A stretch of 64,000 nt of DNA from IMGVR_UViG_3300017991_000002:124001-188000, one strand, 5' to 3'; shown: positions 8,051-50,005, counted from the first letter of the stretch. Numbers and translations are program-made. The notes: generated by a model from the letters alone, not told the origin.

Positions 8051-8321
8051 GACAAGAAGACCAGTCTTTTATACCATAAAAAAGAGTGAATTCTTGTTTG
8101 AAGAGATGAATCGTATAGGGCTGAAGTTGAAGAATATGAGGGATATGGTTACATCGGACAGAAGAATATCGAAAAGAGAATGGGAGGAGTTTATACTGAA
8201 TTCTGCAGAGTCTCAGAAGATGATAAAGGATTGGACAAAATGTGTGGCTGTTTTGAAAGAGACCATAAATGATCAGAGAATAAAACCAAATAAAGAGGAG
8301 ATTGAGAGTGATGATATTTGA
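8043..8321 (+). CDS. Hypothetical protein
   Basis: 92-aa ORF with GAGGAG SD, overlapping both neighbours. Confidence 0.7.
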   Translation: MVKTRRPVFYTIKKSEFLFEEMNRIGLKLKNMRDMVTSDRRISKREWEEFILNSAESQKMIKDWTKCVAVLKETINDQRIKPNKEEIESDDI

Positions 8322-8547: not shown

Positions 8548-8740
8548 ATTCCGATCACGAAGCCAACACCAATATTTGTATTGTAGAGCTATCCTTCATC
8601 GATGGGTTATTTTTTGATTTATTGTCCTTCTGCATCGGGGGAATGTTCTATTCTATGCTTTGTGTTTCACTAACACTACACAGTATTTATTTGGAGGTCT
8701 TTGGAGTTACTTTGATAGACCTCTAAGAAAGGAAATAGGA

Positions 8741-9460
8741 ATGAAAATCTTAAAGAACGGAACAATCGTTACTGATCATCGACTTGACCGCATCCCAAGC
8801 TTCGATAGAGAGAGTAGGAAGTTCTGTATTACTTCCCGCCTCGAGACATCAGCTCCTATTCAAACAAAGATGTGGGAATTGGAACACTACCTGGATCAGG
8901 GACAGGAGGGGGCATGTGTAGGATTTGGTATTTCCCATGAGCTATTGGCCACGCCTAAAGACGCCCCTTATCCTTATGTCAATAACGAGTATGCAAAGGA
9001 ACAGATCTACTGGGAAGCACAGAAGATCGATCCTTGGCCAGGCGGTGCATACCCTGGAGCCAGCCCTTTTTATGAAGGCACTTCAGTCCTGGCTGGTGTT
9101 AAAATAGCCAAGAGCATTGGCTGGTTCGACTCATATTACTGGGCATTCTCCCTGAATGATCTGATGAAGGGAGTATCACAGGAAGGTCCAGCTGTCTTGG
9201 GAGTTAATTGGTATGAAGGTATGATGGATACCGATGCAGCCGGGTATATAAGGCCTACGGGCTCTTGCATAGGTGGTCACTGTATCTGTGCAATAGGGAT
9301 CAATAAAGAAGATGAATACTTTACCCTTCACAATTCCTGGGGGGACTGTTGGGGAGATGATGGTCGATGTCGTATATCCTTTGCTGATATGAGGAGACTC
9401 CTGAACGAGAATGGCGAGGCCTGCTTTTTTGTCGGCCGGCATGTAAAATTACCGAGGTGA
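8741..9460 (+). CDS. Papain-family (C1) cysteine peptidase
   Basis: DQGQEGACVGF (oxyanion Gln and catalytic Cys), GGHCI (His), HNSWG (Asn). Start at ATG 8741 after AAAGGA. Confidence 0.9.
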   Translation: MKILKNGTIVTDHRLDRIPSFDRESRKFCITSRLETSAPIQTKMWELEHYLDQGQEGACVGFGISHELLATPKDAPYPYVNNEYAKEQIYWEAQKIDPWPGGAYPGASPFYEGTSVLAGVKIAKSIGWFDSYYWAFSLNDLMKGVSQEGPAVLGVNWYEGMMDTDAAGYIRPTGSCIGGHCICAIGINKEDEYFTLHNSWGDCWGDDGRCRISFADMRRLLNENGEACFFVGRHVKLPR

Positions 9461-9463
9461 TAC

Positions 9464-9937
9464 ATGTCTGAGTATAAGAGACCTGGCACTTTAGCGGGAG
9501 AAACGGATAAATTGACCACAGGATGCGGCAATCTCTACGTTACCCTAAACAAAGACAAGGGAGGAATAAAAGAATGTTTCTGCGTCTTGGGGAGATCAGG
9601 AGGTTGCCCAGCAGCACAGACTGAAGCAATAGGCCGTCTTATATCCCTTATGCTAAAAGAAGGGGTTTCCAGAAAAGAAATTGCCCAACAGTTAAGAGGG
9701 ATACGTTGCCACAGTCCCCATACTGAGGAGGGTACTGAAGTTCTATCCTGTGCGGATGCTATAGGAATTGCTATGGCCAGAAGATCTGGAATGGCTGTTC
9801 AGGTCGAAAAGGAAATGACATCCGAGAAAAAAGATATCGAGCCATCTAGGGGGGCTTGTCCTGACTGTGGCTCCGCCGTGGTGTATCAGGAAGGTTGTTT
9901 AAAGTGTATGTGTTGTGGCTATAGTGAGTGCGGATAG
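9464..9937 (+). CDS. Stand-alone TSCPD-domain protein (NrdJb-like C-terminal part of class II ribonucleotide reductase)
   Basis: TGCGNLYVTLN, GRSGGC..AQTEAIGRLISL.L, QLRGIRC, LSCADAIG, and a C-terminal Zn ribbon CPDCG...EGCLKCMCCGYSEC. Confidence 0.85.
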   Translation: MSEYKRPGTLAGETDKLTTGCGNLYVTLNKDKGGIKECFCVLGRSGGCPAAQTEAIGRLISLMLKEGVSRKEIAQQLRGIRCHSPHTEEGTEVLSCADAIGIAMARRSGMAVQVEKEMTSEKKDIEPSRGACPDCGSAVVYQEGCLKCMCCGYSECG

Positions 9938-10179: not shown

Positions 10180-10401
10180 ATGAAGACTTCTACATTATTA
10201 TGTGATAGCGTAAACCCTTACGATCCAGATATCCATTGCGATAGACCTCTCGGTCATGATGGATTTCATAGAAGCGGGTTTGCACGATGGGGAAGTAGAG
10301 GATCGGGGGATAACCATATACCGAGCATATGTGACTACAATCATTATAGAGATTACGATCACTCAGTGTTAGGAGGCATGCATGAGATCAAGAAGAACTG
10401 A
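10180..10401 (+). CDS. Small His/Cys-rich hypothetical protein
   Basis: In frame with track ORF 10165..10401; contains HCDRPLGHDGFH. Confidence 0.5.
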   Translation: MKTSTLLCDSVNPYDPDIHCDRPLGHDGFHRSGFARWGSRGSGDNHIPSICDYNHYRDYDHSVLGGMHEIKKN

Positions 10402-10732
10402 TTTGGATCTTTCAACGGTTCAGTTTAAGACGAGTATCAACCTTAGTATCATTAAGGAAACTGAGGAGGCGTGCAGGGGCATTACTACTGACCACGAAAA
10501 GGAGGAAAGGCTGAGCAAGCCTGAGTGCCGTACGTGCCACTACATCAGGAGATCCAGGATAGGCGGAGCTGCAATGACCCAGGCATTATGTTCCTTCTGT
10601 GGAACAGAAATGATGTTTAGTAATACCTGTGTTGATGTCCTTTGTCCAGACTGTGCAAAGAAGCACGAATTGTGTAAACATTGTGGAGGCGACCTGAGGG
10701 ATAGAATGAGAAGGAAGCTGGAAAGAAGGTAA
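10382..10732 (+). CDS. Multi-CxxC zinc-finger protein
   Basis: CRTC, CSFC, CPDC and CKHC motifs; AGGAGG SD. Confidence 0.7.
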   Translation: MRSRRTDLDLSTVQFKTSINLSIIKETEEACRGITTDHEKEERLSKPECRTCHYIRRSRIGGAAMTQALCSFCGTEMMFSNTCVDVLCPDCAKKHELCKHCGGDLRDRMRRKLERR

Positions 10733-10737
10733 TCATC

Positions 10738-11736
10738 ATGCAAGACCCTGCATTCAATTATGAAATAATGATCAATGATCCTGTACGATTGCTTATACTT
10801 GAAAGTATTAAGAAGATTACCAGTGATCCTGTAGAGGTTAGAAGAAATTCGGCAGTTATTCATTACAGCAGGATACCCGAAATAGTGTCAGTTATCTGCC
10901 CTTTCGGTGAAGATCAATTTCAGATAGCCTCTGCCGCTCATGCTTTTCCAGCCATCTCCACAAGAATGGGTACGATTCCAGTACATTATGACACATATCA
11001 CAACCGGGCTATTCACGATATGAGCTTTGACTCCCTGGCAAAGGAAATTGCCTTTCAGATCGATAAGAGGTGTTTGGATCTTATGGAGGATTCTGCATGT
11101 TTTAGAAGGCACTGTCCTATGGAAATAATCCTTGATAACGATACCAATCGCCGATATTTTCTTGAGGGGTATCTTGAGGACACTTTATTTGAGGTCATCA
11201 GTCGTGTAATACAGCAAAGCAGTTATCCCTCAACATTCATGGTTACTGGAGATGCCATAGCAAGGATGTTGAGACATTCTAACCACTTCATGGATTCCAG
11301 TATAACTGAAGGCCCGCCCTCTAGGTCAGAGGGGTATATTCGACACTTCGGGAATTTAGGGAATTGTACTGTATATTCAAGCCCCTTGAGGACGAATGGA
11401 ACTACTTTGATCGGGTCTTTAAGTCCACATAGTTGTCGCCAAGGAGACAGATCATTTGACTGCGGTTTCGTTTATGCTCCATATCTTCCGTTGTCATCGG
11501 TACCAGTATCCATTCCGGCCAATGCTTGGATGGAAATATCGTCACTACGACCCAGAGGGATAGAAAGTCGATACGGAGCGGTTGTTGTTAACCCAAACTT
11601 CTATGCTACCCTTCACTTCGATGTCCGTAACTCAGAAGAGCTTTTATCTGTACCGTCTACAAAACCACCTTACTATCCTAAACCAACCAAGATAGAGTAT
11701 AAAAGAAAGTTAAAGGTGATAAGAAGCAATGGTTAA
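10738..11736 (+). CDS. Diverged T4 gp23/gp24-like capsid-fold paralogue
   Basis: EIAFQIDKRCLDLM and GFVYAPYLPL...GIESRYGAVVVNPNFY align by eye with EELKFEIDREIIRDL and GYIYAPYIPL...ALGTQYGKKVVWDKFY in this window's major capsid protein. Confidence 0.75.
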   Translation: MQDPAFNYEIMINDPVRLLILESIKKITSDPVEVRRNSAVIHYSRIPEIVSVICPFGEDQFQIASAAHAFPAISTRMGTIPVHYDTYHNRAIHDMSFDSLAKEIAFQIDKRCLDLMEDSACFRRHCPMEIILDNDTNRRYFLEGYLEDTLFEVISRVIQQSSYPSTFMVTGDAIARMLRHSNHFMDSSITEGPPSRSEGYIRHFGNLGNCTVYSSPLRTNGTTLIGSLSPHSCRQGDRSFDCGFVYAPYLPLSSVPVSIPANAWMEISSLRPRGIESRYGAVVVNPNFYATLHFDVRNSEELLSVPSTKPPYYPKPTKIEYKRKLKVIRSNG

Positions 11737-12187
11737 TGAACATCGTCCCATAAGGATTCTTGTTGAGGAATGGAACGGCTTCTTATCAGTACTGACTCTT
11801 GAGCACTTGAGCACTGATCAATTTGAGGGGAGAGCTGTCGAGATAATAGATGGATCCGAGCTTTGCCATCGGGGAGGGTGTGAGTGGTGCGACAGGCTTA
11901 GGTATCTTTCTGAAGATAGATTTACATTAGTGTGCAGGGGATGCGGAAAGGTTCTTGATCAGGATAATGACGATTATATAGCCTTCAAAGGAAATGTTAC
12001 AAGAGGATGGACAGGTGGTATCATAGGTCCCAACCTTACCCAACAAAACAGACTGAAGAACGTATCTGTATGGTGCATGGACTGTCGCCTTGTTCTCCTG
12101 AACTACCTTGGCGATATGTTCGAATTGAACGCCCCTCCTCTTAAAAAACCATCCTATCAGTTTAAAAGAAAATTGAGGATTGTATGA
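11729..12187 (+). CDS. Zinc-ribbon hypothetical protein
   Basis: CEWC, CRGC and CMDC motifs; coupled to its neighbours. Confidence 0.65.
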   Translation: MVNEHRPIRILVEEWNGFLSVLTLEHLSTDQFEGRAVEIIDGSELCHRGGCEWCDRLRYLSEDRFTLVCRGCGKVLDQDNDDYIAFKGNVTRGWTGGIIGPNLTQQNRLKNVSVWCMDCRLVLLNYLGDMFELNAPPLKKPSYQFKRKLRIV

Positions 12188-12495
12188 GTCTCGAAGAACT
12201 AAAGTGTCCTGATCTCTTGCCCTGCCCATTCTGTGGGGGTGAGGCTTTTCTGTTAAAAGGACACGTAATTGTAATTCCAGGAATAAGCTATATGCTGTGG
12301 GGAGTCGGGTGTAATAATGGTACCGAACTTTGCTACTGTCTCCCCGATAAGAACCTCTTAATGTGGGGAACTCAAGAAGAAGCAATAAGCGCATGGAATA
12401 AGAGAAGTATCATAGGCAACGAAAAGTCCGACACTGCCTCCAGAAAGCTAATCCCTGATAAAGACAGGAAGAGAAAGATCAGGATTCCTTCCTAA
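12184..12495 (+). CDS. Lar-family restriction alleviation-like protein
   Basis: LLPCPFCGGEA ... GC...C ... EEAISAWNKR signature. Confidence 0.75.
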   Translation: MSLEELKCPDLLPCPFCGGEAFLLKGHVIVIPGISYMLWGVGCNNGTELCYCLPDKNLLMWGTQEEAISAWNKRSIIGNEKSDTASRKLIPDKDRKRKIRIPS

Positions 12496-39410: not shown

Positions 39411-42400
39411 TTAATATTCTAATTCCTCAAACGAGGCACCGGTTGACAGGATGACAAAATCAACGGTAATAATTTCCGCAGCCTTCGTGGGCTTCAGATA
39501 AATACGACCATTCATCTCATTTCTGTCAATCTGGTCCGGAGGATTGGTTGATTCATCACAAATAACTCGAAACTCGTAAACACCCCGACGGTTCTGGATA
39601 TTGGTAAAGATCGGGGTAACGAGATTCACAAACCGTCTCCACGTAACCGGATCATTCGGTTCAAACACCAAGTATTTCACCACAGTAGCAACGATTTTCC
39701 GTGCATACAGCAGTAAACGTCTGACGTTCACTCGATCCAGTGCAGTAGGTGCCCGCTGTGCAGTTCTCTGGCCCCAAATCGTAATACCGTCCGGATAGAA
39801 GTTGACAATCGGGTTCACAACATTTGGATAGCCATACATTAAATCCCGATCGCCTTGGTTTGGAGACATCTCGAGATCTATAGCAGCAATGATGTGTGCT
39901 CTATTGTATCCAGCGGGTGCATACCATGGTTCAGACACATAGTCAGTATATGCATACACTGCAGCTACATGCCCGCTCGGGGGCGTCCACACTTCAACCG
40001 CATTGTACGAATCATATACCTTGACCCACGGCCAATAGATGGCTGCATAGGACGAGTTGATTGCCTGCCCGGGTGAATAAGATCCTTGACGATTGGACCA
40101 ATCAACCACCGACTGAGGACCCGTAAGACCGAACGGGGGATCCAGAATGCACATACAATCAGCCCTGTTCTCACACATCGAAATCATATACGTATGAACT
40201 GCCGTTGCCGAAACTCCAGGAACGATAACAAGGTTCACATCCAAGGTTTCAGCATTAGCATAGATATGGAGACCCGTAGGATCACCGGAAGGATCAGCTG
40301 CGACACCGATGTAATCGGCCTCAGAAAGAGCTCCAGTTCCATTTGACCCCTGCAGGGCAACCGTAGCACCGAATGCATAGGTTCCATAGGCCGGAGGCAA
40401 CCCAATGCCACCATCCTCAGCAACCATATATTTCGATGGATTATAATCTGACGCTTCTGTCCCAAGCTGTGTTTCGATGAAACTATCAGCATCAGTATCG
40501 TTGACAGTCAAGTTGTCAAAAGACGCAACTCGTGTCCCGCTGTAATACAGATCGATCTTGAAAGCATCACGAAACTCGTAGTAGGGAGAATCCTCCACTG
40601 GTTCAGCTGGGTTGTCAGTCACCCATTGATCATGCTGTGTCTTCTGGTAACCCTCATCGACAATAGCGGACAAGTTATTACCGTCCGTTCCGGGGGTCTG
40701 GGCGATCAACGTAAACGTCGCCTGCTCAGTTCCCGTTCCCCAGTGAACTGAATTATCAAGCCCGAGAGGGGTGTCTGCAGTACTTGCTGCATCCACAAGC
40801 AGAGAAGCCGCCGGGCCTTCAAGAGTCGTTGTGATCCTAACATAATTCTTGTAATTCGAAGCTGTTGCTCCAGTCAGCCCGCTAAGATCGGCAATGACTG
40901 CATCAGTCGTAACCGTTCCGGACGTCAGAGTAAACGATTGAGAGGCAGACCCGGCTACAGCACCTGGCCCCGCTTCAACGTAACCGGCCTGGAAGACATT
41001 CGTCCCAACCGTTCCTGCAGCAACTGCAATCGTCGAAGAGGTTCCTAACGTCGGTGTCGTTTCATCATTACTGATGAAATAAAAATAACCGTTGCTCCAC
41101 TCAACTTTGATGTTCTGGTTTCCGGGCCATGCGAGTCCATTAATTGCGGACTCCATTACTTGTGCCACGTCAGACATATCAGCAGCAGACGTAAAGTCCA
41201 TACTGGAAGCTTCCAGGGCCCCAGCACCATCCAAATTGACCTGAATCGAACCATTCGAGATTGCTTGAAAGTTCGAAAGGTTGGCAGTGCTGTCACCAGA
41301 TCTATAGTAACCAAAAGGGTTAACCCATACGGTTAATGCAACATCCCCATCAGTGCCTACCTCAGATGCAGGTATTGATATACCAGAACCAAAGACATCC
41401 GTATATCCTTCAATCGTAGAGGGGACCGTCTTGAACTCTATCTCCCCCGAAGACCCGATCGTATTGGTTCTGACGTAGACATAGGTATTAGCGCCGATCG
41501 TTTCCGGCCAAGCGGTAATACCAGTCGTCCCCGCATTTATATCATCACACATGTGCTGGGCAGTAGTATTGGTATCCCTGAACCTGACTTCTTGGTCGGC
41601 TCCTCCATCGACAGCGAGGATGATAACATCATTTCCATCCGAACCTGCTGTAGGAGTTACCGTAGCCATTACCATATAGCTGGCACCATGAACGTCCGTC
41701 CCCGTCCCACCCGGAACAGAGGTGAATGTGGCATTGACATTACTTCCAGTCTCATTGACGTCTGACTCGAAGGAGAAATGATTTCCTCCGACATAGGTGA
41801 AATTCTCATTCCTGCTCGTAGCCGCCCGAATACCAGCCTGGATTGTGGCAGCAACATCATTCAGATCAAGATCGGATGTAAAATCAAGACCGGTTATATC
41901 GATGTTCGATGAAGATCCAGCCCTGTCAGTGTAAACCATCCTGAACTCACCGTCAGAAACCAACTGGAAAGCAGCCAGGTTTCCGGAAGAAGTTCCACCA
42001 ATACACTTGAACGTCGTTGATTCAGTAATGGAATACGTTTGGGCCTCTTCACCTTCAATTGTTCCATAGGTTGCGGCGCTTAAGGTAAAGGAACCTTCAT
42101 TAGCGCCGGTAATAAGTGCCGGTCCTTCCTCGGCCGGAATTTCGGCCTTTGCCTTCGTTTCTGATCCATCAGTAATTCTAACAAAGTAACTCTGGTTACC
42201 TTTGGACATAAACTGAAGGTGGGCCAACGTAGCAAGGTGATCACTGCTCGGGTTACCAAACTCACGGATGAATTGGGTATGACTCGAGATATAAATCGCC
42301 TCGTTGACCGGTCCCTTTGTTGCAGTCCCCAAATTACCAAGAATACTGGTCGATATCTGGGGAGCATACAACGAAAGGTCTATTTCTCTTATGTATACTC

Positions 42401-42422
42401 CTGGAGATACATAAACTGGCAT
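39411..42422 (-). CDS. Tail sheath protein (gp18-like) with large inserted domains
   Basis: YVSPGVYIREID, YWPWVKV, PPSGHVAA, WYAPAG.NR, RVNVRRLL, VFEPND, KPTKAAEII. Confidence 0.97.
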   Translation of the reverse strand: MPVYVSPGVYIREIDLSLYAPQISTSILGNLGTATKGPVNEAIYISSHTQFIREFGNPSSDHLATLAHLQFMSKGNQSYFVRITDGSETKAKAEIPAEEGPALITGANEGSFTLSAATYGTIEGEEAQTYSITESTTFKCIGGTSSGNLAAFQLVSDGEFRMVYTDRAGSSSNIDITGLDFTSDLDLNDVAATIQAGIRAATSRNENFTYVGGNHFSFESDVNETGSNVNATFTSVPGGTGTDVHGASYMVMATVTPTAGSDGNDVIILAVDGGADQEVRFRDTNTTAQHMCDDINAGTTGITAWPETIGANTYVYVRTNTIGSSGEIEFKTVPSTIEGYTDVFGSGISIPASEVGTDGDVALTVWVNPFGYYRSGDSTANLSNFQAISNGSIQVNLDGAGALEASSMDFTSAADMSDVAQVMESAINGLAWPGNQNIKVEWSNGYFYFISNDETTPTLGTSSTIAVAAGTVGTNVFQAGYVEAGPGAVAGSASQSFTLTSGTVTTDAVIADLSGLTGATASNYKNYVRITTTLEGPAASLLVDAASTADTPLGLDNSVHWGTGTEQATFTLIAQTPGTDGNNLSAIVDEGYQKTQHDQWVTDNPAEPVEDSPYYEFRDAFKIDLYYSGTRVASFDNLTVNDTDADSFIETQLGTEASDYNPSKYMVAEDGGIGLPPAYGTYAFGATVALQGSNGTGALSEADYIGVAADPSGDPTGLHIYANAETLDVNLVIVPGVSATAVHTYMISMCENRADCMCILDPPFGLTGPQSVVDWSNRQGSYSPGQAINSSYAAIYWPWVKVYDSYNAVEVWTPPSGHVAAVYAYTDYVSEPWYAPAGYNRAHIIAAIDLEMSPNQGDRDLMYGYPNVVNPIVNFYPDGITIWGQRTAQRAPTALDRVNVRRLLLYARKIVATVVKYLVFEPNDPVTWRRFVNLVTPIFTNIQNRRGVYEFRVICDESTNPPDQIDRNEMNGRIYLKPTKAAEIITVDFVILSTGASFEELEY

Positions 42423-45646: not shown

Positions 45647-48387
45647 TTACGGTGAAGTAAACACGTTACCGCTGCAGTAGAACTTGTCCCAAACGACTTT
45701 CTTGCCGTACTGAGTCCCCAACGCTTTACGAACGACGAAATCGTCGAGGGTAATGGTCGGAGTTTCATACAGCGGGATATACGGTGCATAAATGTAACCG
45801 GTTTCCAGGAATGAAACACCCTTATACCCGACGAGGAAATCCGTCGCCGTCATATAAGGATCTTTGTAACAATCCCATTTCCCTTGAAGAGTCCCAATCT
45901 TCATGACACCCATACCGCCGGTAGCACCAGACGGAACAAAACCAGGCAGAGTTTCGATGATGTTACAAACCTCAACACCAGCGACAACCCAGTTGCCCGT
46001 TGCACGTCTGGTCTGCTGAAAGATCAGGTTAGAGGCTTCAACAAGGGTATCGAGGAATGCCTGTTTGTGCTCTGTCCAGGAAACACCCGTCGGGAGCTTC
46101 CGGTCAAAAGACACGGTACCTGCAGCAGCGATATTGGTCAAATCGCGGATTATTTCGCGGTCAATTTCAAATTTGCACTTTTGTTACTACCATCATTTGA
46201 TGGCGGGCAGGTCATCTCTGCCTGCCTCTCTACGTCACCGTAGAGGTCTGACTATATCTTCACCCACCGCTTCCTGAAGCGGGGAGGGGGCTGCCGTAGC
46301 CTCTGCAGTTTCCCACAGAGACGTAGTCGATGAACTAGAGAAAAGGAAATCTTCAGTCAAAACCAGAAAGTAAGCACTGTTTTTGGAGCACCAAGCTCGA
46401 GCGGCCTCAAACTTCTCCTCACAATAGCTCAAGAAACTTTCAGGTTTGATCTCAACCAGGAACTTTCGCCCGTCAACGAGAGTTACCAGGTAGTCCGGCA
46501 CATAGTGCTGAAACGATCCATAAGGTATTACTACCTCTTCGTACTGAATATTTGCCACGATCAGGTCGGTATCGATCAATTCCAGGAACTTCAATTCATA
46601 CGAAGACCTGTAATAAAATCTTCCCAATCTGCCGCTAAGGTAACCAGTTTTATACTGATTATTATTTCGCCTGCCCTCTGCAATCATCTTGGCCATACCC
46701 AACGAGACCTTCTTCCGATTTTCAGGATCCTTATACCTCTCCACCTGAGCCTCAGAAATCTTCTTTCTCCATTCCGGGGTTATGACCTTACCAAGAGCAC
46801 CCTGACTCATACTTTCCCTAGCCTCTTCTGAGGTATCAGTTCCAAGACGATTTCTTGTCCGTCTTGCAGCATCAGCACATTTCGGATTGTCTTTATTGGC
46901 CTTGGATATACTATCTCGATGAGACTGACTCAATTTAACTCCTTTATGAGACAGGCTCATTTGCTTTTTAGCATATCTTGAGACTATGGCATGATCTTTC
47001 TTATATACGTCAAGATCGATCTCCGGATGTGCATGCCTCAAATGACTAAGCAAATTATGAGCTTTATACTCTTTGCAGATTTGGCAAGTTATTTTTTCCA
47101 TCTTTTCTCCAGCTGCTGATTGTCTCACAGCTCGTGAGAGGTTCCAGCAATTAAGCAGCTTGTAACGCCCAGCATCTCTGCTGAGGGAGCCCAGTTTCGT
47201 TAAGCTCTTCCGCGAGGACCGCAACCAATTCTGCCTCTGCTTCAATCCCGTGAACATTCCGCAGGTTAGCAGCAGCTTCCATTGACCATCGGCTTCTCAG
47301 CTTACGGGTCCGTGCGATGACGGGCGAGCTGGTAAGCACCAAGTCAACCTCAGGCAGATTCGGGTTTCCTTCCATGTTGTAATCATACGTGGAAGTGACC
47401 AGGGTTGTATTATCAATAGTGTTACTAAAAGTCACACTGACTGAACCAGACGAGTAGTCAATGGTTCCTGTTCCATCACCGGTAAATCCCCCTGCTCCAT
47501 CATCCGTAACGGTCAGATCAGAGGCAGCGGCAGTACTGTAACCGGTGACTGTAATCGTACCAGGACGGATTGGGATAAAAGACAGAGAGCCGGTATAAGG
47601 ACCAGTAGTACCATTGGCCGTAGCAACCGTCTCAGACTCGACCTTCTCTGAGCTGTAGTAATCAGCCGCAGCAGTGTAGCCCTGAGTATCTTCAATTACC
47701 TGGCCTTTGCTGATGGCGCCTTTATTGGTACCATAAACAAACTGCAGATAGAAGACGATACTGGCAGGTCCCAGCATAGGCTGAACACTGACCAGATCAG
47801 TAGCGATCAGGTTCGGGAATATAGCTCGAATCAACGGGACTTAATTCTGCTATATTTGTTATTTACAGGGCTCTTTATCCCTGTGCTCCGATTTCTCGGA
47901 GGATCGGATCATATCATCTTCCTGGGTACTATCTTTCAGGAAGCCAGGCGCTCGTGCCTCTGTTACTGCTTTCGCTCGAGAGGTGATCTCTGAACCTTCT
48001 TCAGCCCTGGAGATATTCATCGTTACGTCTGAAGCTTGGCTGCTGATTGTCTTAGATGTAAATATGTCTGACATATGAAGATTTCCAGCAATTCACCTGG
48101 TTATTCGACAGCCATTACTGACTGAAGGCGCTCCCATTTAATCCATAAGTTTTACAGAGTGGCAACGCGAATTTTTCGAAGTTTGCTATTCCCGGAGAAG
48201 TCGTAGTCGTTGTTTCATACAGAGGATCTTTATTGGCGAAAAATCGATGCTGGCTTTCCAGCAAGAAAGCTGTCACCGTTCGCTTATAATCGTCCTCAAT
48301 AGATTCGCAAAGAGGTGACCATTTTGGGGAATTAGCAAGGCTCTCCCCTTTCTGGGTCATCTCTTCAACTAACATTTGCCGTTCCAT
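45647..48387 (-). CDS. Major capsid protein (T4 gp23-like) in three exons: complement(join(45647..46175,47203..47839,48165..48387)), 462 aa
   Basis: Splicing gives ...FEKFA/FPLIRAIFPNLIATDLVSVQPM... and ...LAEEL/KFEIDREII...; gp23 motifs TRKLRSRWSMEAA.NL and YAPYIPL. Joined length 223+637+529=1389 nt. Confidence 0.92.
46176..47202 (-). mobile_element. Group I intron (1027 nt) carrying a putative homing endonuclease
   Basis: The 5' exon ends GAGCU; the intron starts UAACGAAAC and ends G. IGS GGCUC; P AAUUGCUGGAA (47152-47142), Q AAUCAGCAG (47121-47113), R GUUCAUCGACUA (46335-46324), S AAGAUAUAGUC (46260-46250). Confidence 0.92.
46235..47101 (-). CDS. Intron-encoded endonuclease: Zn finger, NUMOD3-like repeats and TnsA-N-like PD-(D/E)XK domain (288 aa)
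   Basis: CQIC...HLRHAH; HKGVKLSQSHRDSISKA and GKVITPEWRKKISEA; YRSSYEL.F...YVPDYLV...LVEIKP. GGAG SD upstream of ATG 47101. Confidence 0.85.
   Translation of the reverse strand: MEKITCQICKEYKAHNLLSHLRHAHPEIDLDVYKKDHAIVSRYAKKQMSLSHKGVKLSQSHRDSISKANKDNPKCADAARRTRNRLGTDTSEEARESMSQGALGKVITPEWRKKISEAQVERYKDPENRKKVSLGMAKMIAEGRRNNNQYKTGYLSGRLGRFYYRSSYELKFLELIDTDLIVANIQYEEVVIPYGSFQHYVPDYLVTLVDGRKFLVEIKPESFLSYCEEKFEAARAWCSKNSAYFLVLTEDFLFSSSSTTSLWETAEATAAPSPLQEAVGEDIVRPLR
47840..48164 (-). ncRNA. Group I intron (325 nt) without an endonuclease ORF
   Basis: The 5' exon ends GCGU and the intron ends G. IGS AAUGGGA-G-CGC (48138-48128) pairs with both exons; P AAUUGCUGGAAA, Q AAUCAGCAG, R GUUCAGAGAUCA, S GAUAUGAUCC. 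Confidence 0.92.
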
Positions 48388-48415: not shown

Positions 48416-50005
48416 TTATCTCCAACCGTGTTTCTTGATAACTTTTCTTGCCAGGACCGCTGAAGAATTGTCCTGGACATCCTCCATGAGCCAACTTTCA
48501 TCATCCTCGTTAAAGTCCAAGGAATCCCCATCACCTTCTTGTCCTTCATACAAGTATCGAGATCCGCCTGTCGGCAGGGGCTCCAAGTCCATTCCTCTCC
48601 CGGAAACTACTGGTGATCCCAATGCTTCCCGGTAACCTTCCAACAAGTTAAGTGTCTGCACCATCTCCTCTTGGCTCTGGCACTGCTCCAGGATAGGTTT
48701 CAGAAACTCGGCATGCGGGTGGTCTTCGAGGATCCCCTCAAGATACGATGTGATCTGGGCCTCGTTCCCTTTTTCGAGCACGGATTCTAAGACATCTACA
48801 GATGCATTGTACTTCTCGGTTATGTCTTCGAGAGCTCCTTCCAACTGCTCTGCATACTCTGACAAAGACTCGATCTGCTTTTCTTGTTCTTCCAATCCTT
48901 CTGCCACTTCAGCAGAGCCCTCTTCGACTCTCTCTTCAAGCCTAGTCGTCAGCTCTTCGATGATTGCTTCAGATGCACCCAATTCCTCTTCCAAGGCGTT
49001 ATATGATTCAGCCATTTCACGGAATCGGTTCTTCATTTCATCGATGACGGCGACAGAGGCATTATACTTCCCCTGGATCTCGTTGAGAGTGCTTTTATCT
49101 TCTACGATAGCAGCCATCTGCTCTTGAAGAAGTTCAACATTCTCATTGATTACTTTATTATCCAGAGTACCATTTTCTTTCTCTTTCGGCATGGTATTTC
49201 CTCCTTCGGATATATTTTTACACTCTTCAGTCCCGTATGGTATCTTGGGTTGAATCAGTTCGTTTGCTTGTGATATCTCCTCTCGCAAAATGGAAACGAC
49301 GTCCTTCGTGCCTTCGGCATCCAGTCCATCGGTGTTCTCTATACTCATAAGGGCACATCTGTGCTCCTCTAATTTCAACGACATCTCAACCAGCTCGGCA
49401 GTTTCCTTTTCTTCCAAATCCTCGAGGTCAAGCCCTTTAAGATAATTGCTTATCTCCTCGAGCTTTGACACTGCCTCTACCGGGGAGAACTCAATACTTT
49501 CTGACAAAACTGCTGGAAAGGCGCCGGCAGTTGAAGGGTTGGCCACGAAGTCCCACGTCTCCAATTTATAATCGTCTTGAACGATCGGTTTGTCCCTCCC
49601 AAGGCTGCCAGTTCCTCGTGAAGAGATACCGACTCGAGTTCCGCCTTTAAACAGTTCTTGGAGTATTTTCCCGTTCGGGGTATCGAGAATTTCTGCCTCC
49701 CCGATTATAGTTCCATCGTCCTGAATATCGACTCCGGTAATTATGTGGGAGACCCTTTGAAGAGATGTTTTACCAGAACTCGGATGGTCCAACTCCCCGA
49801 ACATCCCTCGATTATCAAGCCTATCCCTAACTTTTTGCTCTTTGAGCTTTTTTCCGAACAGACCGTTCGGATAGATCCTACCGTTCTCGTTCTGAACACC
49901 TTCACGTTGGAAGACGCCTTTGACCTTCATCCGCTTCGATCCGTCGCCTTCCTCCAATATCTGGTATTGGAACGGTATCACATCAATAAGTAGTTGCTCT
50001 GTCAT
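48416..50005 (-). CDS. Prohead protease (gp21-like) fused to a coiled-coil scaffold (gp22-like)
   Basis: GVFQREGVQNENGRIYP, GELDHP, RVSHII, ILDTPNGKIL, GISSRGTGS, WDFVANPS; then about 300 aa of acidic coiled coil. Confidence 0.93.
   Translation of the reverse strand: MTEQLLIDVIPFQYQILEEGDGSKRMKVKGVFQREGVQNENGRIYPNGLFGKKLKEQKVRDRLDNRGMFGELDHPSSGKTSLQRVSHIITGVDIQDDGTIIGEAEILDTPNGKILQELFKGGTRVGISSRGTGSLGRDKPIVQDDYKLETWDFVANPSTAGAFPAVLSESIEFSPVEAVSKLEEISNYLKGLDLEDLEEKETAELVEMSLKLEEHRCALMSIENTDGLDAEGTKDVVSILREEISQANELIQPKIPYGTEECKNISEGGNTMPKEKENGTLDNKVINENVELLQEQMAAIVEDKSTLNEIQGKYNASVAVIDEMKNRFREMAESYNALEEELGASEAIIEELTTRLEERVEEGSAEVAEGLEEQEKQIESLSEYAEQLEGALEDITEKYNASVDVLESVLEKGNEAQITSYLEGILEDHPHAEFLKPILEQCQSQEEMVQTLNLLEGYREALGSPVVSGRGMDLEPLPTGGSRYLYEGQEGDGDSLDFNEDDESWLMEDVQDNSSAVLARKVIKKHGWR

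What the first reader, a model, noticed from the sequence alone, without database searches (positions are those of the whole stretch)
10738..11736. Second capsid-fold gene stranded in the accessory region, on the opposite strand
Seen: gp23-type motifs matching this window's own major capsid protein, about 34 kb from the head genes, with no recognisable propeptide and with the C-terminal KRKLKV tag. Known: T4 gp24 is a gp23 paralogue but sits beside gp23, and some defence systems such as CapRel and Lit sense capsid proteins. Inference: a displaced vertex protein, a decoy against capsid-sensing immunity or satellites, or an exapted capsid fold.
Basis: partly seen in the sequence, partly recalled or inferred. 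Interest (0 to 1): 0.7.

Follow-up and report, generated by a model that had tools for sequence, protein, structure and literature searches.

The report
Stripped-down second capsid-family gene with tail tag
A 205-kb sediment phage carries, far from its head genes, an intact but highly diverged and pared-down copy of its T4-type capsid protein, which ends in a short basic tail that the phage also puts on about twenty unrelated accessory proteins; it is probably a re-used capsid fold, not an ordinary shell or vertex protein.

Summary
Window 10738-11736 (+) is an intact 332-aa ORF. It passes Pfam Gp23 (40 bits against a cut-off of 24.4) and aligns to a capsid-protein profile at 97% probability over residues 90-295. 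Its model matches T4 gp23 and gp24 best (Z 14.3, 13.4).

It is not an ordinary major capsid or gp24 vertex protein:
- It lacks the propeptide, the conserved N-arm ('Gol') motif and the insertion domain.
- It sits on a long branch apart from the phage's own capsid protein and from gp24.
- It has no orthologue among 1.84 billion representative proteins.
- The nearest cultured relatives (SP-15, LIS04) have a single gp23-type gene.

The gene is the third from last in a tightly packed accessory operon, two genes before a Lar-like anti-restriction gene.

Its tail, a Pro-rich linker followed by YKRKLKV, is real. Twenty ORFs in this genome end in [KR][KR][KR][LIVM][KR][LIVM], against 0.43 expected. 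The motif is in frame, its codons vary, and the tagged proteins are otherwise unrelated. A second tagged mini-protein outside the window carries only the gp23 N-arm motif.

The most likely reading is an exapted capsid fold working with the tagged accessory set. What it does is inferred, not shown.

The parts
10738..11736 (+). Focal CDS, 332 aa: diverged gp23-family (HK97-fold) protein with a C-terminal linker and tail
   Evidence: ORF; Pfam Gp23 40 bits, above the cut-off; hhalign 97.3%; model matches T4 gp23 and gp24; ESM Atlas single-sequence model has TM 0.67 to a Gp23 cluster
10738..11004 (+). Residues 1-89: N-terminal part with no detectable similarity to the capsid propeptide, N-arm, E-loop or insertion domain
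   Evidence: Not aligned by hhalign or Pfam. Model pLDDT is mostly under 50. About 190 gp23 residues (66-255) have at most 77 counterparts here
11005..11622 (+). Residues 90-295: spine helix, P domain and A domain of the gp23/HK97 fold
   Evidence: hhalign residues 90-295 to capsid positions 260-453; VIA-align model 79-297 to T4 gp23 256-521, Z 14.3
11638..11733 (+). Residues 301-332: Pro-rich linker (STKPPYYPKPTK) and basic tail YKRKLKV (DNA 11698-11718), lying beyond the natural C-terminus of capsid proteins
   Evidence: Alignment A1 shows the capsid proteins end about 35 residues earlier; pI of the segment is 10.1; tail statistics
11712..11731 (+). AAGGTGA Shine-Dalgarno inside the tail codons, and the ATG (11729) of the next gene, which overlaps the focal stop
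   Evidence: Sequence read directly; distances tabulated
11729..12187 (+). Downstream 152-aa Cys-rich ORFan ending in FKRKLRIV (tail DNA 12164-12181), translationally coupled on both sides
   Evidence: no family or phage homologue
12184..12495 (+). Lar-like restriction-alleviation protein, 103 aa, ending in RKRKIRIPS (tail DNA 12469-12486); last gene of the plus-strand block
   Evidence: Pfam Lar_restr_allev 34.2 bits against a cut-off of 28.6, residues 10-74; phrog_599; tail
10382..10732 (+). Upstream 116-aa double zinc-ribbon protein (phrog_15241) with a relaxed basic tail RRKLERR
   Evidence: Homologues in Bacillus phages cover only residues 1-103, so the tail is an addition
45647..48387 (-). 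The phage's own gp23-type major capsid gene in three exons: exon 1 from 48387 to about 48158, exon 2 from about 47834 to 47203, exon 3 from 46175 to 45647
   Evidence: Pfam Gp23 95.6 and 98.2 bits on the exon 3 and exon 2 pieces; Rfam group I intron at 47885-48165, 64.2 bits; exon junctions inferred from alignment to relatives

Best explanation
This is a real, intact gene for a highly diverged, pared-down member of the gp23 (T4-type, HK97-fold) capsid family. It keeps the spine helix, P domain and A domain, with the family's GxxYAPYxPL and RYG..NPxFY motifs.

It has lost the N-terminal propeptide with its protease site, the conserved N-arm ('Gol') motif and the insertion domain. It has gained a Pro-rich linker and the basic tail [FY]KRKL[KR][ILV]. 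This phage appends that tail to about 20 otherwise unrelated small accessory proteins.

The gene is the third from last in a tightly packed, translationally coupled accessory operon on the strand opposite the virion genes. A tagged Cys-rich ORFan and a tagged Lar-like anti-restriction gene follow it.

Shown: family membership, the pared-down architecture, the location, the lack of orthologues, and the shared tail.

Inferred: it is not a stoichiometric shell or gp24-type vertex subunit. It is an exapted capsid fold that acts with the tagged accessory set. The most plausible action is capsid-protein mimicry, binding something that normally binds the capsid protein: a host sensor, a chaperone or the assembly machinery. 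The tail would serve as a common address or docking peptide.

The confidence of 0.5 is for the whole statement. Family membership is about 0.95, 'not an ordinary gp24 or shell subunit' about 0.75, and the mimicry mechanism about 0.3.
For: Family and fold:
- Pfam Gp23 above the cut-off and hhalign 97.3%.
- AlphaFold model: the top 50 Foldseek hits are all HK97-fold capsid proteins.
- VIA-align Z 14.3 to T4 gp23, and 13.4 and 12.2 to gp24.
- ESM Atlas single-sequence model: TM 0.67 to a Gp23 cluster, independent of my alignment.

Missing parts:
- Alignment A1.
- No match before residue 90.

Not ordinary:
- The only other gp23-type match over the Pfam cut-off in the 205-kb genome is the capsid gene itself.
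- SP-15 and LIS04 have one gp23-type gene each.
- There are no orthologues in 5.8 billion clusters, 1.84 billion representatives or IMG/VR.
- In the maximum-likelihood tree the focal protein has a branch of 1.3 substitutions per site. The phage's own capsid protein sits inside the Thornevirus-like clade (97% support), and gp24 pairs with T4 gp23.
- It has 7 Cys and 11 His; related capsid proteins have 0-1 Cys and 4-5 His.

Native and maintained:
- Codon usage correlates 0.9 with the rest of the genome, and the frame is open.
- Start and stop are coupled to the neighbouring genes.

Accessory context:
- The operon holds a peptidase, a TSCPD protein, zinc ribbons and a Lar-like protein.

Tail:
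- 20 C-terminal copies against 0.43 expected, with a maximum of 3 in 200 shuffles.
- 18 of 20 DNA-level sites are in frame with a long ORF that ends within 14 codons.
- Codons vary synonymously, for example CGC, CGA and AGR for Arg and five different Leu codons.
- The tagged proteins are unrelated to each other.
- The tail lies beyond the conserved domain in the three proteins with recognisable domains.

A second capsid-derived tagged protein:
- A 162-aa ORF at genome 29996-30484 carries a 29-residue copy of the N-arm motif, 48% identical to the phage's own capsid protein, pairwise E 4e-6.
Against: - There are no expression, virion or interaction data. Only one sediment metagenome run holds the phage.
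- The AlphaFold model was built on an alignment of capsid proteins. Its mean pLDDT is 65, and residues 1-77 are unreliable.
- The N-terminal 96 residues are about as long as an HK97 N-arm plus E-loop, so a complete, assembly-competent minimal fold is not excluded.
- The complex prediction with the downstream protein gave no answer.
- With no orthologues, selection cannot be measured.
- The mimicry mechanism rests on gene neighbourhood and analogy only.
- The tail overlaps the next gene's Shine-Dalgarno in about half of the cases, so part of its conservation is at the RNA level.
Confidence: 0.5

Rival explanations
1. It is a displaced vertex or minor capsid subunit. The protein forms the pentons, or occupies special positions, in the head as T4 gp24 does, but is encoded elsewhere.
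For: It has the same fold family as gp24. The genome has no other gp24-like gene. The N-terminal 96 residues are about long enough for a minimal N-arm and E-loop. gp24 itself is a diverged gp23 paralogue (established knowledge).
Against: It does not group with gp24. It has no propeptide or protease site, no N-arm motif and no insertion domain. It is on the opposite strand, in an accessory operon 34 kb from the head module. Relatives build heads with one gp23-type gene. It has no orthologues, whereas structural proteins are normally conserved. It carries the tail otherwise found only on small accessory proteins.
Confidence: 0.2
2. A shell-and-cargo or packaging system. The shared C-terminal peptide would be a loading signal, as in encapsulin cargo or the T4 capsid-targeting sequence. 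It would send the tagged proteins into a capsid-like container, either the phage head for co-injection or a small shell made by the focal protein.
For: The focal protein is a minimal HK97 fold of encapsulin-like size without a scaffold domain. At least 20 unrelated proteins carry a conserved C-terminal peptide behind a Pro/Glu-rich linker, as encapsulin cargo does. One tagged protein is an anti-restriction homologue, a class that some phages co-inject (established knowledge of P1 Dar and T4 IPI).
Against: The candidate shell protein carries the tail itself. Encapsulins match less well (Z about 10-11) than T4 gp23 (Z 14.3). The complex prediction gave no answer. No receptor has been identified.
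Confidence: 0.12
3. The tail is a turnover or hub-docking signal, such as a MuA-type ClpX C-motif-2 degron, and the capsid-like gene is simply one more early protein under that control. It may be a decaying duplicate with little function of its own.
For: The MuA degron ...NRRKKAI is a basic-then-hydrophobic C-terminal signal (PMC12723719), like KRKLRI. The focal branch is twice as long as that of the phage's own capsid protein. No orthologues exist.
Against: The tail lies 0-8 residues from the end, not at the very end. The likeness to MuA is by eye only. The frame is intact and the fold-critical motifs are kept at 25% identity, which argues against decay.
Confidence: 0.12
4. The 'tag' is only a by-product of a purine-rich ribosome-binding or translational-operator sequence for the next gene and has no role as a peptide.
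For: In about half of the cases the GAGG or AAGG inside the motif sits 2-10 nt before the next start codon. One out-of-frame copy at window 8293 acts purely as a Shine-Dalgarno.
Against: 18 of 20 DNA-level sites are in one frame of the upstream ORF. Spacing to the next start ranges from 2 to 29 nt, and separate Shine-Dalgarno sequences are present when it is far. Three copies have no downstream gene. Arg and Leu codons vary synonymously. An aromatic residue precedes the motif in 9 of 20 copies, and the linker is enriched in Pro (10.3% against 4.1%).
Confidence: 0.08

Closest known systems
T4 gp23 major capsid protein family (Pfam PF07068), including this phage's own capsid protein and those of Thornevirus SP-15 and LIS04
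   Same: Homologous spine helix, P domain and A domain. The motifs GxxYAPYxPL and RYG..NPxFY are shared. It gives the best structural match (Z 14.3).
   Different: 21-27% identity to all members. It lacks the propeptide, the VQPM..PTG N-arm/Gol motif and the insertion domain. It has about 35 extra C-terminal residues with a basic tail. It is rich in Cys and His, is encoded in an accessory operon on the opposite strand, and has no orthologues.
T4 gp24 vertex protein
   Same: A second, diverged gp23-family gene in one genome. Structural match Z 12.2-13.4.
   Different: gp24 lies close to gene 23 (one homing-endonuclease gene, segD, lies between them). It is cleaved by the prohead protease, and it keeps the N-arm, E-loop and insertion domain. 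In the tree gp24 pairs with T4 gp23, not with this protein.
Encapsulin shell proteins and their C-terminal cargo-loading peptides
   Same: A minimal HK97 fold of about 300 aa without a scaffold domain. Many unrelated proteins share a short C-terminal peptide behind a flexible linker.
   Different: The structural match is weaker than to gp23 (Z about 10-11). The candidate shell carries the peptide itself. The peptide is basic (KRKLRI), unlike known encapsulin targeting peptides. No binding has been shown.
Gol peptide of T4 gp23 (Lit/EF-Tu exclusion) and other capsid-sensing defences such as CapRel
   Same: Outside the window, the phage encodes a tagged mini-protein with only the gp23 N-arm motif, the stretch that includes Gol in T4. 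The focal protein keeps the rest of the fold.
   Different: No sensor is known for this phage or its unknown host. No phage-encoded capsid decoy has been described in the papers searched. This is an analogy only.
MuA-type ClpX recognition signal (C-motif 2, ...RRKKAI)
   Same: A C-terminal run of basic residues followed by a hydrophobic residue, on a phage protein.
   Different: The consensus differs, the tail is not always at the extreme C-terminus, and the likeness is untested.

Membership tests
gp23-type major capsid protein family (PF07068, HK97 fold) | Sequence match to the family profile above the curated cut-off | tested here: met
   40 bits against a cut-off of 24.4, E 4.4e-10; hhalign 97.3%, E 2.4e-11
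gp23-type major capsid protein family (PF07068, HK97 fold) | HK97 P-domain and A-domain fold | tested here: met
   Z 14.3 to T4 gp23 over model residues 79-297. All of the top 50 Foldseek hits are capsid proteins. The ESM Atlas model gives TM 0.67 to a Gp23 cluster
gp23-type major capsid protein family (PF07068, HK97 fold) | N-terminal propeptide with a prohead-protease site, and the conserved N-arm motif (PNLIA..VSVQPM..G) | tested here: not met
   No alignment before residue 90. A1 shows the propeptide is absent and the motif is degenerate (KITSDPVEV)
gp23-type major capsid protein family (PF07068, HK97 fold) | gp23-type insertion domain between the E-loop strands | tested here: not met
   About 110-150 capsid-protein columns are gapped in the focal row. 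gp23 residues 66-255 have at most 77 counterparts
gp23-type major capsid protein family (PF07068, HK97 fold) | Encoded in the head module beside the protease/scaffold gene | tested here: not met
   It lies 34 kb away on the opposite strand, in an accessory operon
T4 gp24-type vertex protein | Groups with gp24, or branches as a sister of the resident gp23 | tested here: not met
   In the maximum-likelihood tree the focal protein is on its own long branch with the truncated P0003. gp24 pairs with T4 gp23, and the phage's own capsid protein sits inside the Thornevirus-like clade. Resolution is weak at this level of divergence
T4 gp24-type vertex protein | Present in virions at the eleven non-portal vertices | not testable with these tools
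   Needs virion mass spectrometry or cryo-EM; the phage is known only from a metagenome
Encapsulin shell with targeted cargo | Closest structural relatives are encapsulins | tested here: not met
   Encapsulins score Z about 10-11, below T4 gp23 and gp24 at 12-14
Encapsulin shell with targeted cargo | Cargo proteins carry a conserved C-terminal peptide that binds the shell protein | tested here: inconclusive
   A shared C-terminal peptide exists on 20 ORFs. The complex prediction of the focal protein with a tagged neighbour gave no answer
ClpX C-motif-2 (MuA-like) degron | Basic C-terminal signal recognised by ClpX | not testable with these tools
   The only evidence is a likeness by eye to ...NRRKKAI

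The most novel reading that the evidence does not exclude
The phage runs a peptide-address system. A short C-terminal tail, [FY]KRKL[KR][ILV] behind a Pro/Glu-rich linker, sends about 20 unrelated accessory proteins to one destination or partner. The set includes a Lar-like anti-restriction protein, a pared-down capsid-fold protein and a mini-protein that carries only the Gol-type capsid motif. The destination could be loading into the head or into a capsid-like shell for co-injection, or docking on one host hub. On this reading, the two capsid-derived members are decoys or adaptors built from pieces of the phage's own coat protein.
Probability: 0.2. Interest if true: 0.85.

Novelty: new variant of a known kind. 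Interest (0 to 1): 0.55.

Why it matters
Capsid proteins are frequent triggers of bacterial immunity, and the HK97 fold has been re-used before, in encapsulins. Here a phage keeps a pared-down, fast-evolving copy of its own coat protein among counter-defence-type genes, and also a separate mini-protein with only the most conserved coat motif. That would be a concrete, testable case of a virus re-using its coat fold for something other than the shell.

The shared tail on about 20 unrelated proteins looks like an undescribed sorting or docking signal in a phage. It can be tested directly with tagged reporters.

The caveat is that everything rests on one metagenomic genome, with no relatives and no expression data.

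Tried and rejected
Searches for relatives:
- Orthologues: the word-based search of 5.8 billion clusters, the exhaustive phmmer of 1.84 billion representatives and IMG/VR returned only the protein itself, plus generic capsid proteins at E above 1e-4. One repeat protein, P0002, was a false hit.
- Close relatives of the phage: the tail sheath found a single IMG/VR fragment at 40% identity.
- PDB sequence search: nothing.
- NCBIfam and PADLOC: nothing relevant.
- PHROGs places gp23 and gp24 in one family (phrog_138), so it cannot separate them.
- Homologues of the 162-aa Gol-motif protein: only the protein itself.
- Homologues of the downstream 152-aa protein in phage records: none.

Other tests that led nowhere:
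- Complex prediction of the focal protein with the downstream tagged protein: no answer, no evidence either way.
- Timing from promoters: the sigma-70-like scan was barely above shuffles (39 against 29) and T4 late-type TATAAATA is not enriched, so no timing call was made.
- Literature search for the tail strings: no relevant paper.

Rejected readings:
- Recent duplicate of the phage's own capsid gene: 24-26% identity and no sister grouping.
- Foreign island: codon usage matches the genome.
- The tail as a DNA repeat: the flanks are not conserved.
- The tail as purely a ribosome-binding site: frame test.

Full report
**What is there.** Window 10738-11736 (+) is an open frame of 332 codons. The two other frames on that strand hold 20 and 25 stops. 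A GAAGG Shine-Dalgarno lies 9 nt before the ATG, and the last codons overlap the ATG of the next gene at 11729.

The window is bases 124001-188000 of a 205,367-bp IMG/VR virus record with direct terminal repeats, rated complete. It comes from a JGI sediment metagenome.

**Is it a capsid-family protein?** Yes.
- Pfam Gp23 (PF07068) matches residues 98-290 at 40 bits. The curated cut-off is 24.4, and E is 4.4e-10.
- A profile-profile comparison with 22 gp23-type capsid proteins, including T4 gp23 and gp24, gives 97.3% probability and E 2.4e-11. Residues 90-295 align to capsid positions 260-453.
- Against exon 3 of the phage's own capsid protein, BLASTP gives 24% identity and E 5e-8, with GFVYAPYLPL against GYIYAPYIPL.
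- An AlphaFold model built on an alignment with capsid proteins has mean pLDDT 65 and pTM 0.61. It is well defined for residues 84-230 and 275-297.
- The top 50 Foldseek hits in the PDB are all HK97-fold capsid proteins.
- VIA-align ranks T4 gp23 first (Z 14.3, model 79-297 on gp23 256-521). T4 gp24 scores Z 13.4 and 12.2, and encapsulins about 10-11.
- The AlphaFold model leans on my capsid alignment, so an independent check matters. The ESM Atlas holds a single-sequence model of this protein (pTM 0.58). Its nearest structural neighbour is a Gp23-family cluster, TM 0.67 over residues 2-304.

**What it lacks and what it has gained.** Alignment A1 shows several differences from ordinary capsid proteins:
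- The 60-80-residue propeptide with the E|xTQ-type protease site is absent.
- The most conserved family motif, PNLIA.DIVSVQPM..G.I.YL, is at best degenerate (KITSDPVEV...VIHYSRI).
- The insertion domain is absent.
- No method aligns anything before residue 90, and the model there has pLDDT under 50.
- The 96 residues before the spine helix are about as long as an HK97 N-arm plus E-loop. A complete minimal fold therefore cannot be excluded, but it is not shown.
- At the other end the protein runs about 35 residues past the point where capsid proteins stop. This extension is a Pro-rich linker (STKPPYYPKPTK) and then YKRKLKV-IRSNG, with pI 10.1.
- It has 7 Cys and 11 His; related capsid proteins have 0-1 Cys and 4-5 His.

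**The real head genes.** The phage's own capsid gene lies at 45647-48387 on the minus strand, next to a prohead protease (phrog_207, 48416-50005).
- It is split into three exons.
- The first interruption is a group I intron by Rfam (47885-48165, 64.2 bits against a gathering score of 50).
- The second (about 47202-46176) holds a TnsA-like/homing-endonuclease ORF. It has sub-threshold group I matches at both ends.
- Bacillus phage SP-15 has the same kind of split capsid gene.

**Relatives.** Tail sheath and capsid protein place the phage as a distant relative of Thornevirus (Bacillus SP-15, Listeria LIS04), with 42-43% identity.
- Both of those genomes have exactly one gp23-type gene. The focal protein finds only that gene in them.
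- In this genome the only other match to the Gp23 profile over the cut-off is the capsid gene itself.
- The focal protein has no orthologue. The word-based search of 5.8 billion clusters returns only itself. The exhaustive phmmer of 1.84 billion representatives returns itself, two ordinary capsid proteins and one 220-aa truncated gp23-like protein at E above 1e-4, and a false repeat hit. IMG/VR returns nothing.

**Origin.** I built a maximum-likelihood tree on the shared 189 columns.
- The phage's own capsid protein falls inside the Thornevirus-like clade (97% support).
- T4 gp24 pairs with T4 gp23.
- The focal protein sits on a branch of 1.3 substitutions per site, joined only to the other truncated protein, which is probably long-branch attraction.
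- Identity to every capsid protein is 21-27%.
- The protein therefore does not group with gp24. An old duplication followed by fast change cannot be told from an acquisition.
- Codon usage matches the rest of the genome (r = 0.9), so it is not a recent foreign insert.

**Context.** The gene is the third from last in a plus-strand block of tightly packed, often overlapping small genes. The block contains:
- a sigma-like regulator;
- a papain-like peptidase;
- a stand-alone TSCPD protein;
- several zinc-ribbon proteins, one with homologues in Bacillus phages;
- the focal gene;
- a Cys-rich 152-aa ORFan;
- a Lar-like restriction-alleviation protein.

The block ends by overlapping the stop of the minus-strand virion module by 4 nt. 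Promoter scans gave no usable timing signal.

**The tail is a genome-wide feature.**
- Twenty open frames in this genome have [KR][KR][KR][LIVM][KR][LIVM] within 10 residues of their stop. Residue shuffles give 0.43 on average and at most 3 in 200 runs. Internal copies number 5 against 3.45 expected.
- The copies lie in three accessory regions: 13-37 kb on the minus strand, 66-71 kb on the plus strand, and 134.7-136.5 kb, which is the focal gene and its two downstream neighbours. None lies in the virion module. About ten further ORFs have relaxed versions.
- A frame-blind DNA scan finds 20 sites against 1.2 expected. Eighteen are in the reading frame of a long ORF that ends within 14 codons.
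- Codons vary synonymously: AGA, AGG, CGC and CGA for Arg, and five different Leu codons.
- Spacing to the next start codon ranges from 2 to 29 nt. Where the start is far, a separate Shine-Dalgarno is present. Three copies have no downstream gene.
- An aromatic residue precedes the motif in 9 of 20 copies. The 16 residues before it are enriched in Pro (10.3% against 4.1%) and Glu.
- The tagged proteins share no other similarity with each other, and most are ORFans.
- In the three with a recognisable domain, the tail lies beyond that domain. Lar matches Pfam over residues 10-74 of 103. The zinc-ribbon homologues cover residues 1-103 of 116. The focal protein extends past the end of capsid proteins.
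- In about half of the cases the GAGG or AAGG inside the motif also serves as the next gene's Shine-Dalgarno. One out-of-frame copy at window 8293 is only that. So the sequence is dual-use, but the peptide is under selection.
- SP-15 and LIS04 have no copy of the DNA motif.
- The strings are not in the literature library in any relevant paper.

**A second capsid-derived tagged protein.** The weak fourth Gp23 match in the genome is a 162-aa ORF at genome 29996-30484 on the minus strand, outside the window.
- Its residues 101-127, RAFFRITPQLINVQPMLGPTGEIFHLR, are 48% identical to the start of exon 2 of the phage's own capsid protein (pairwise E 4e-6).
- It scores 18.5 bits on Pfam Gp23, below the cut-off.
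- It ends in FRHIRKLRIQK.
- In T4 gp23 the same motif spans about residues 100-128, with QPM at residue 115.
- A review states that the 29-residue Gol region, which binds EF-Tu and activates Lit, is the most conserved part of gp23 (PMC3014915). That the two stretches coincide is my inference.
- So the phage has one tagged protein that keeps the capsid core without this motif, and another that keeps only the motif.

**Interpretation.** Four things are shown: a real, maintained, pared-down gp23-family gene; its accessory setting; its uniqueness; and a shared peptide tail. The rest is inferred.

The protein is unlikely to be an ordinary shell or gp24-type vertex subunit, for these reasons:
- it has no propeptide, N-arm motif or insertion domain;
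- it is in the wrong module and on the wrong strand;
- the relatives have no second gp23-type gene;
- it has no orthologues;
- it carries the accessory-type tail.

It more likely works with the tagged accessory set as a re-used capsid fold. I favour capsid-protein mimicry, meaning that it binds something that normally binds the coat protein, with the tail acting as a common address. The function is the weakest step.

The rivals are:
- a displaced vertex or minor head protein (0.2);
- a loading signal for the head or for a small shell, by analogy with encapsulin cargo peptides (0.12);
- a MuA-like ClpX signal on a drifting duplicate (0.12; MuA degron ...NRRKKAI, PMC12723719);
- a tail that is only a by-product of ribosome-binding sites (0.08).

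The one complex prediction, the focal protein with its tagged neighbour, gave no answer.

**Verdict.** It is a new variant of a known kind. Interest is moderate, because the evidence rests on a single metagenomic genome. The genome-wide tail and the paired capsid-derived proteins are unexpected and can be tested directly.

Noticed in passing
window 45647-48387 (-): The major capsid gene is split into three exons. One interruption is a group I intron (47885-48165, Rfam 64.2 bits). The other is about 1 kb (about 47202-46176), holds a TnsA-like/homing-endonuclease ORF and has sub-threshold group I matches at both ends. Bacillus phage SP-15 also has an endonuclease-bearing split capsid gene.
   Followed up: partly
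genome G000:C1:29996-30484 (-) = L004:1426-1914:-: A 162-aa ORFan (called as 127 aa in the public collection). It carries a 29-residue copy of the gp23 N-arm/Gol-type motif (NVQPMLGPTGEIFHLR) and ends in a relaxed basic tail (RKLRIQK). It has no homologues.
   Followed up: partly
genome-wide: 13-37 kb (-), 66-71 kb (+), window 11701-11718, 12164-12181, 12469-12486: Twenty ORFs end in [KR][KR][KR][LIVM][KR][LIVM], often preceded by F or Y and a Pro/Glu-rich linker, against 0.43 expected. About ten more have relaxed versions. None lies in the virion module, and none is found in SP-15 or LIS04.
   Followed up: yes
window 8293-8310 (+): One out-of-frame DNA copy of the tail motif (AAGAGGAGATTGAGAGTG) lies directly before a start codon, where it can only act as a Shine-Dalgarno. 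This shows the sequence is dual-use.
   Followed up: partly
window 8660-9937 (+): A papain-like cysteine peptidase (phrog_16701, E 1.8e-50) is followed by a stand-alone TSCPD domain protein with a C-terminal zinc ribbon. TSCPD is normally part of ribonucleotide reductase. Both lie in the same operon as the focal gene.
   Followed up: no
window 48416-50005 (-): The prohead protease (S77/phrog_207) is 529 aa. It has a long coiled-coil C-terminal half that looks like a fused scaffold.
   Followed up: no
window 39411-42422 (-): The tail sheath is 1003 aa. Relatives match only its two ends (37-41% coverage), so it carries a large lineage-specific middle insertion.
   Followed up: no
P0003 / L018 (Logan SRR24742824 contig, 1.6 kb): An unrelated metagenome encodes a 220-aa mini gp23-like protein. 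It joins the N-arm motif (ELVAVQPLGEP) almost directly to the C-terminal GYVYAPYIPV...NPNYYGTL strands. Truncated gp23 derivatives therefore occur elsewhere.
   Followed up: partly
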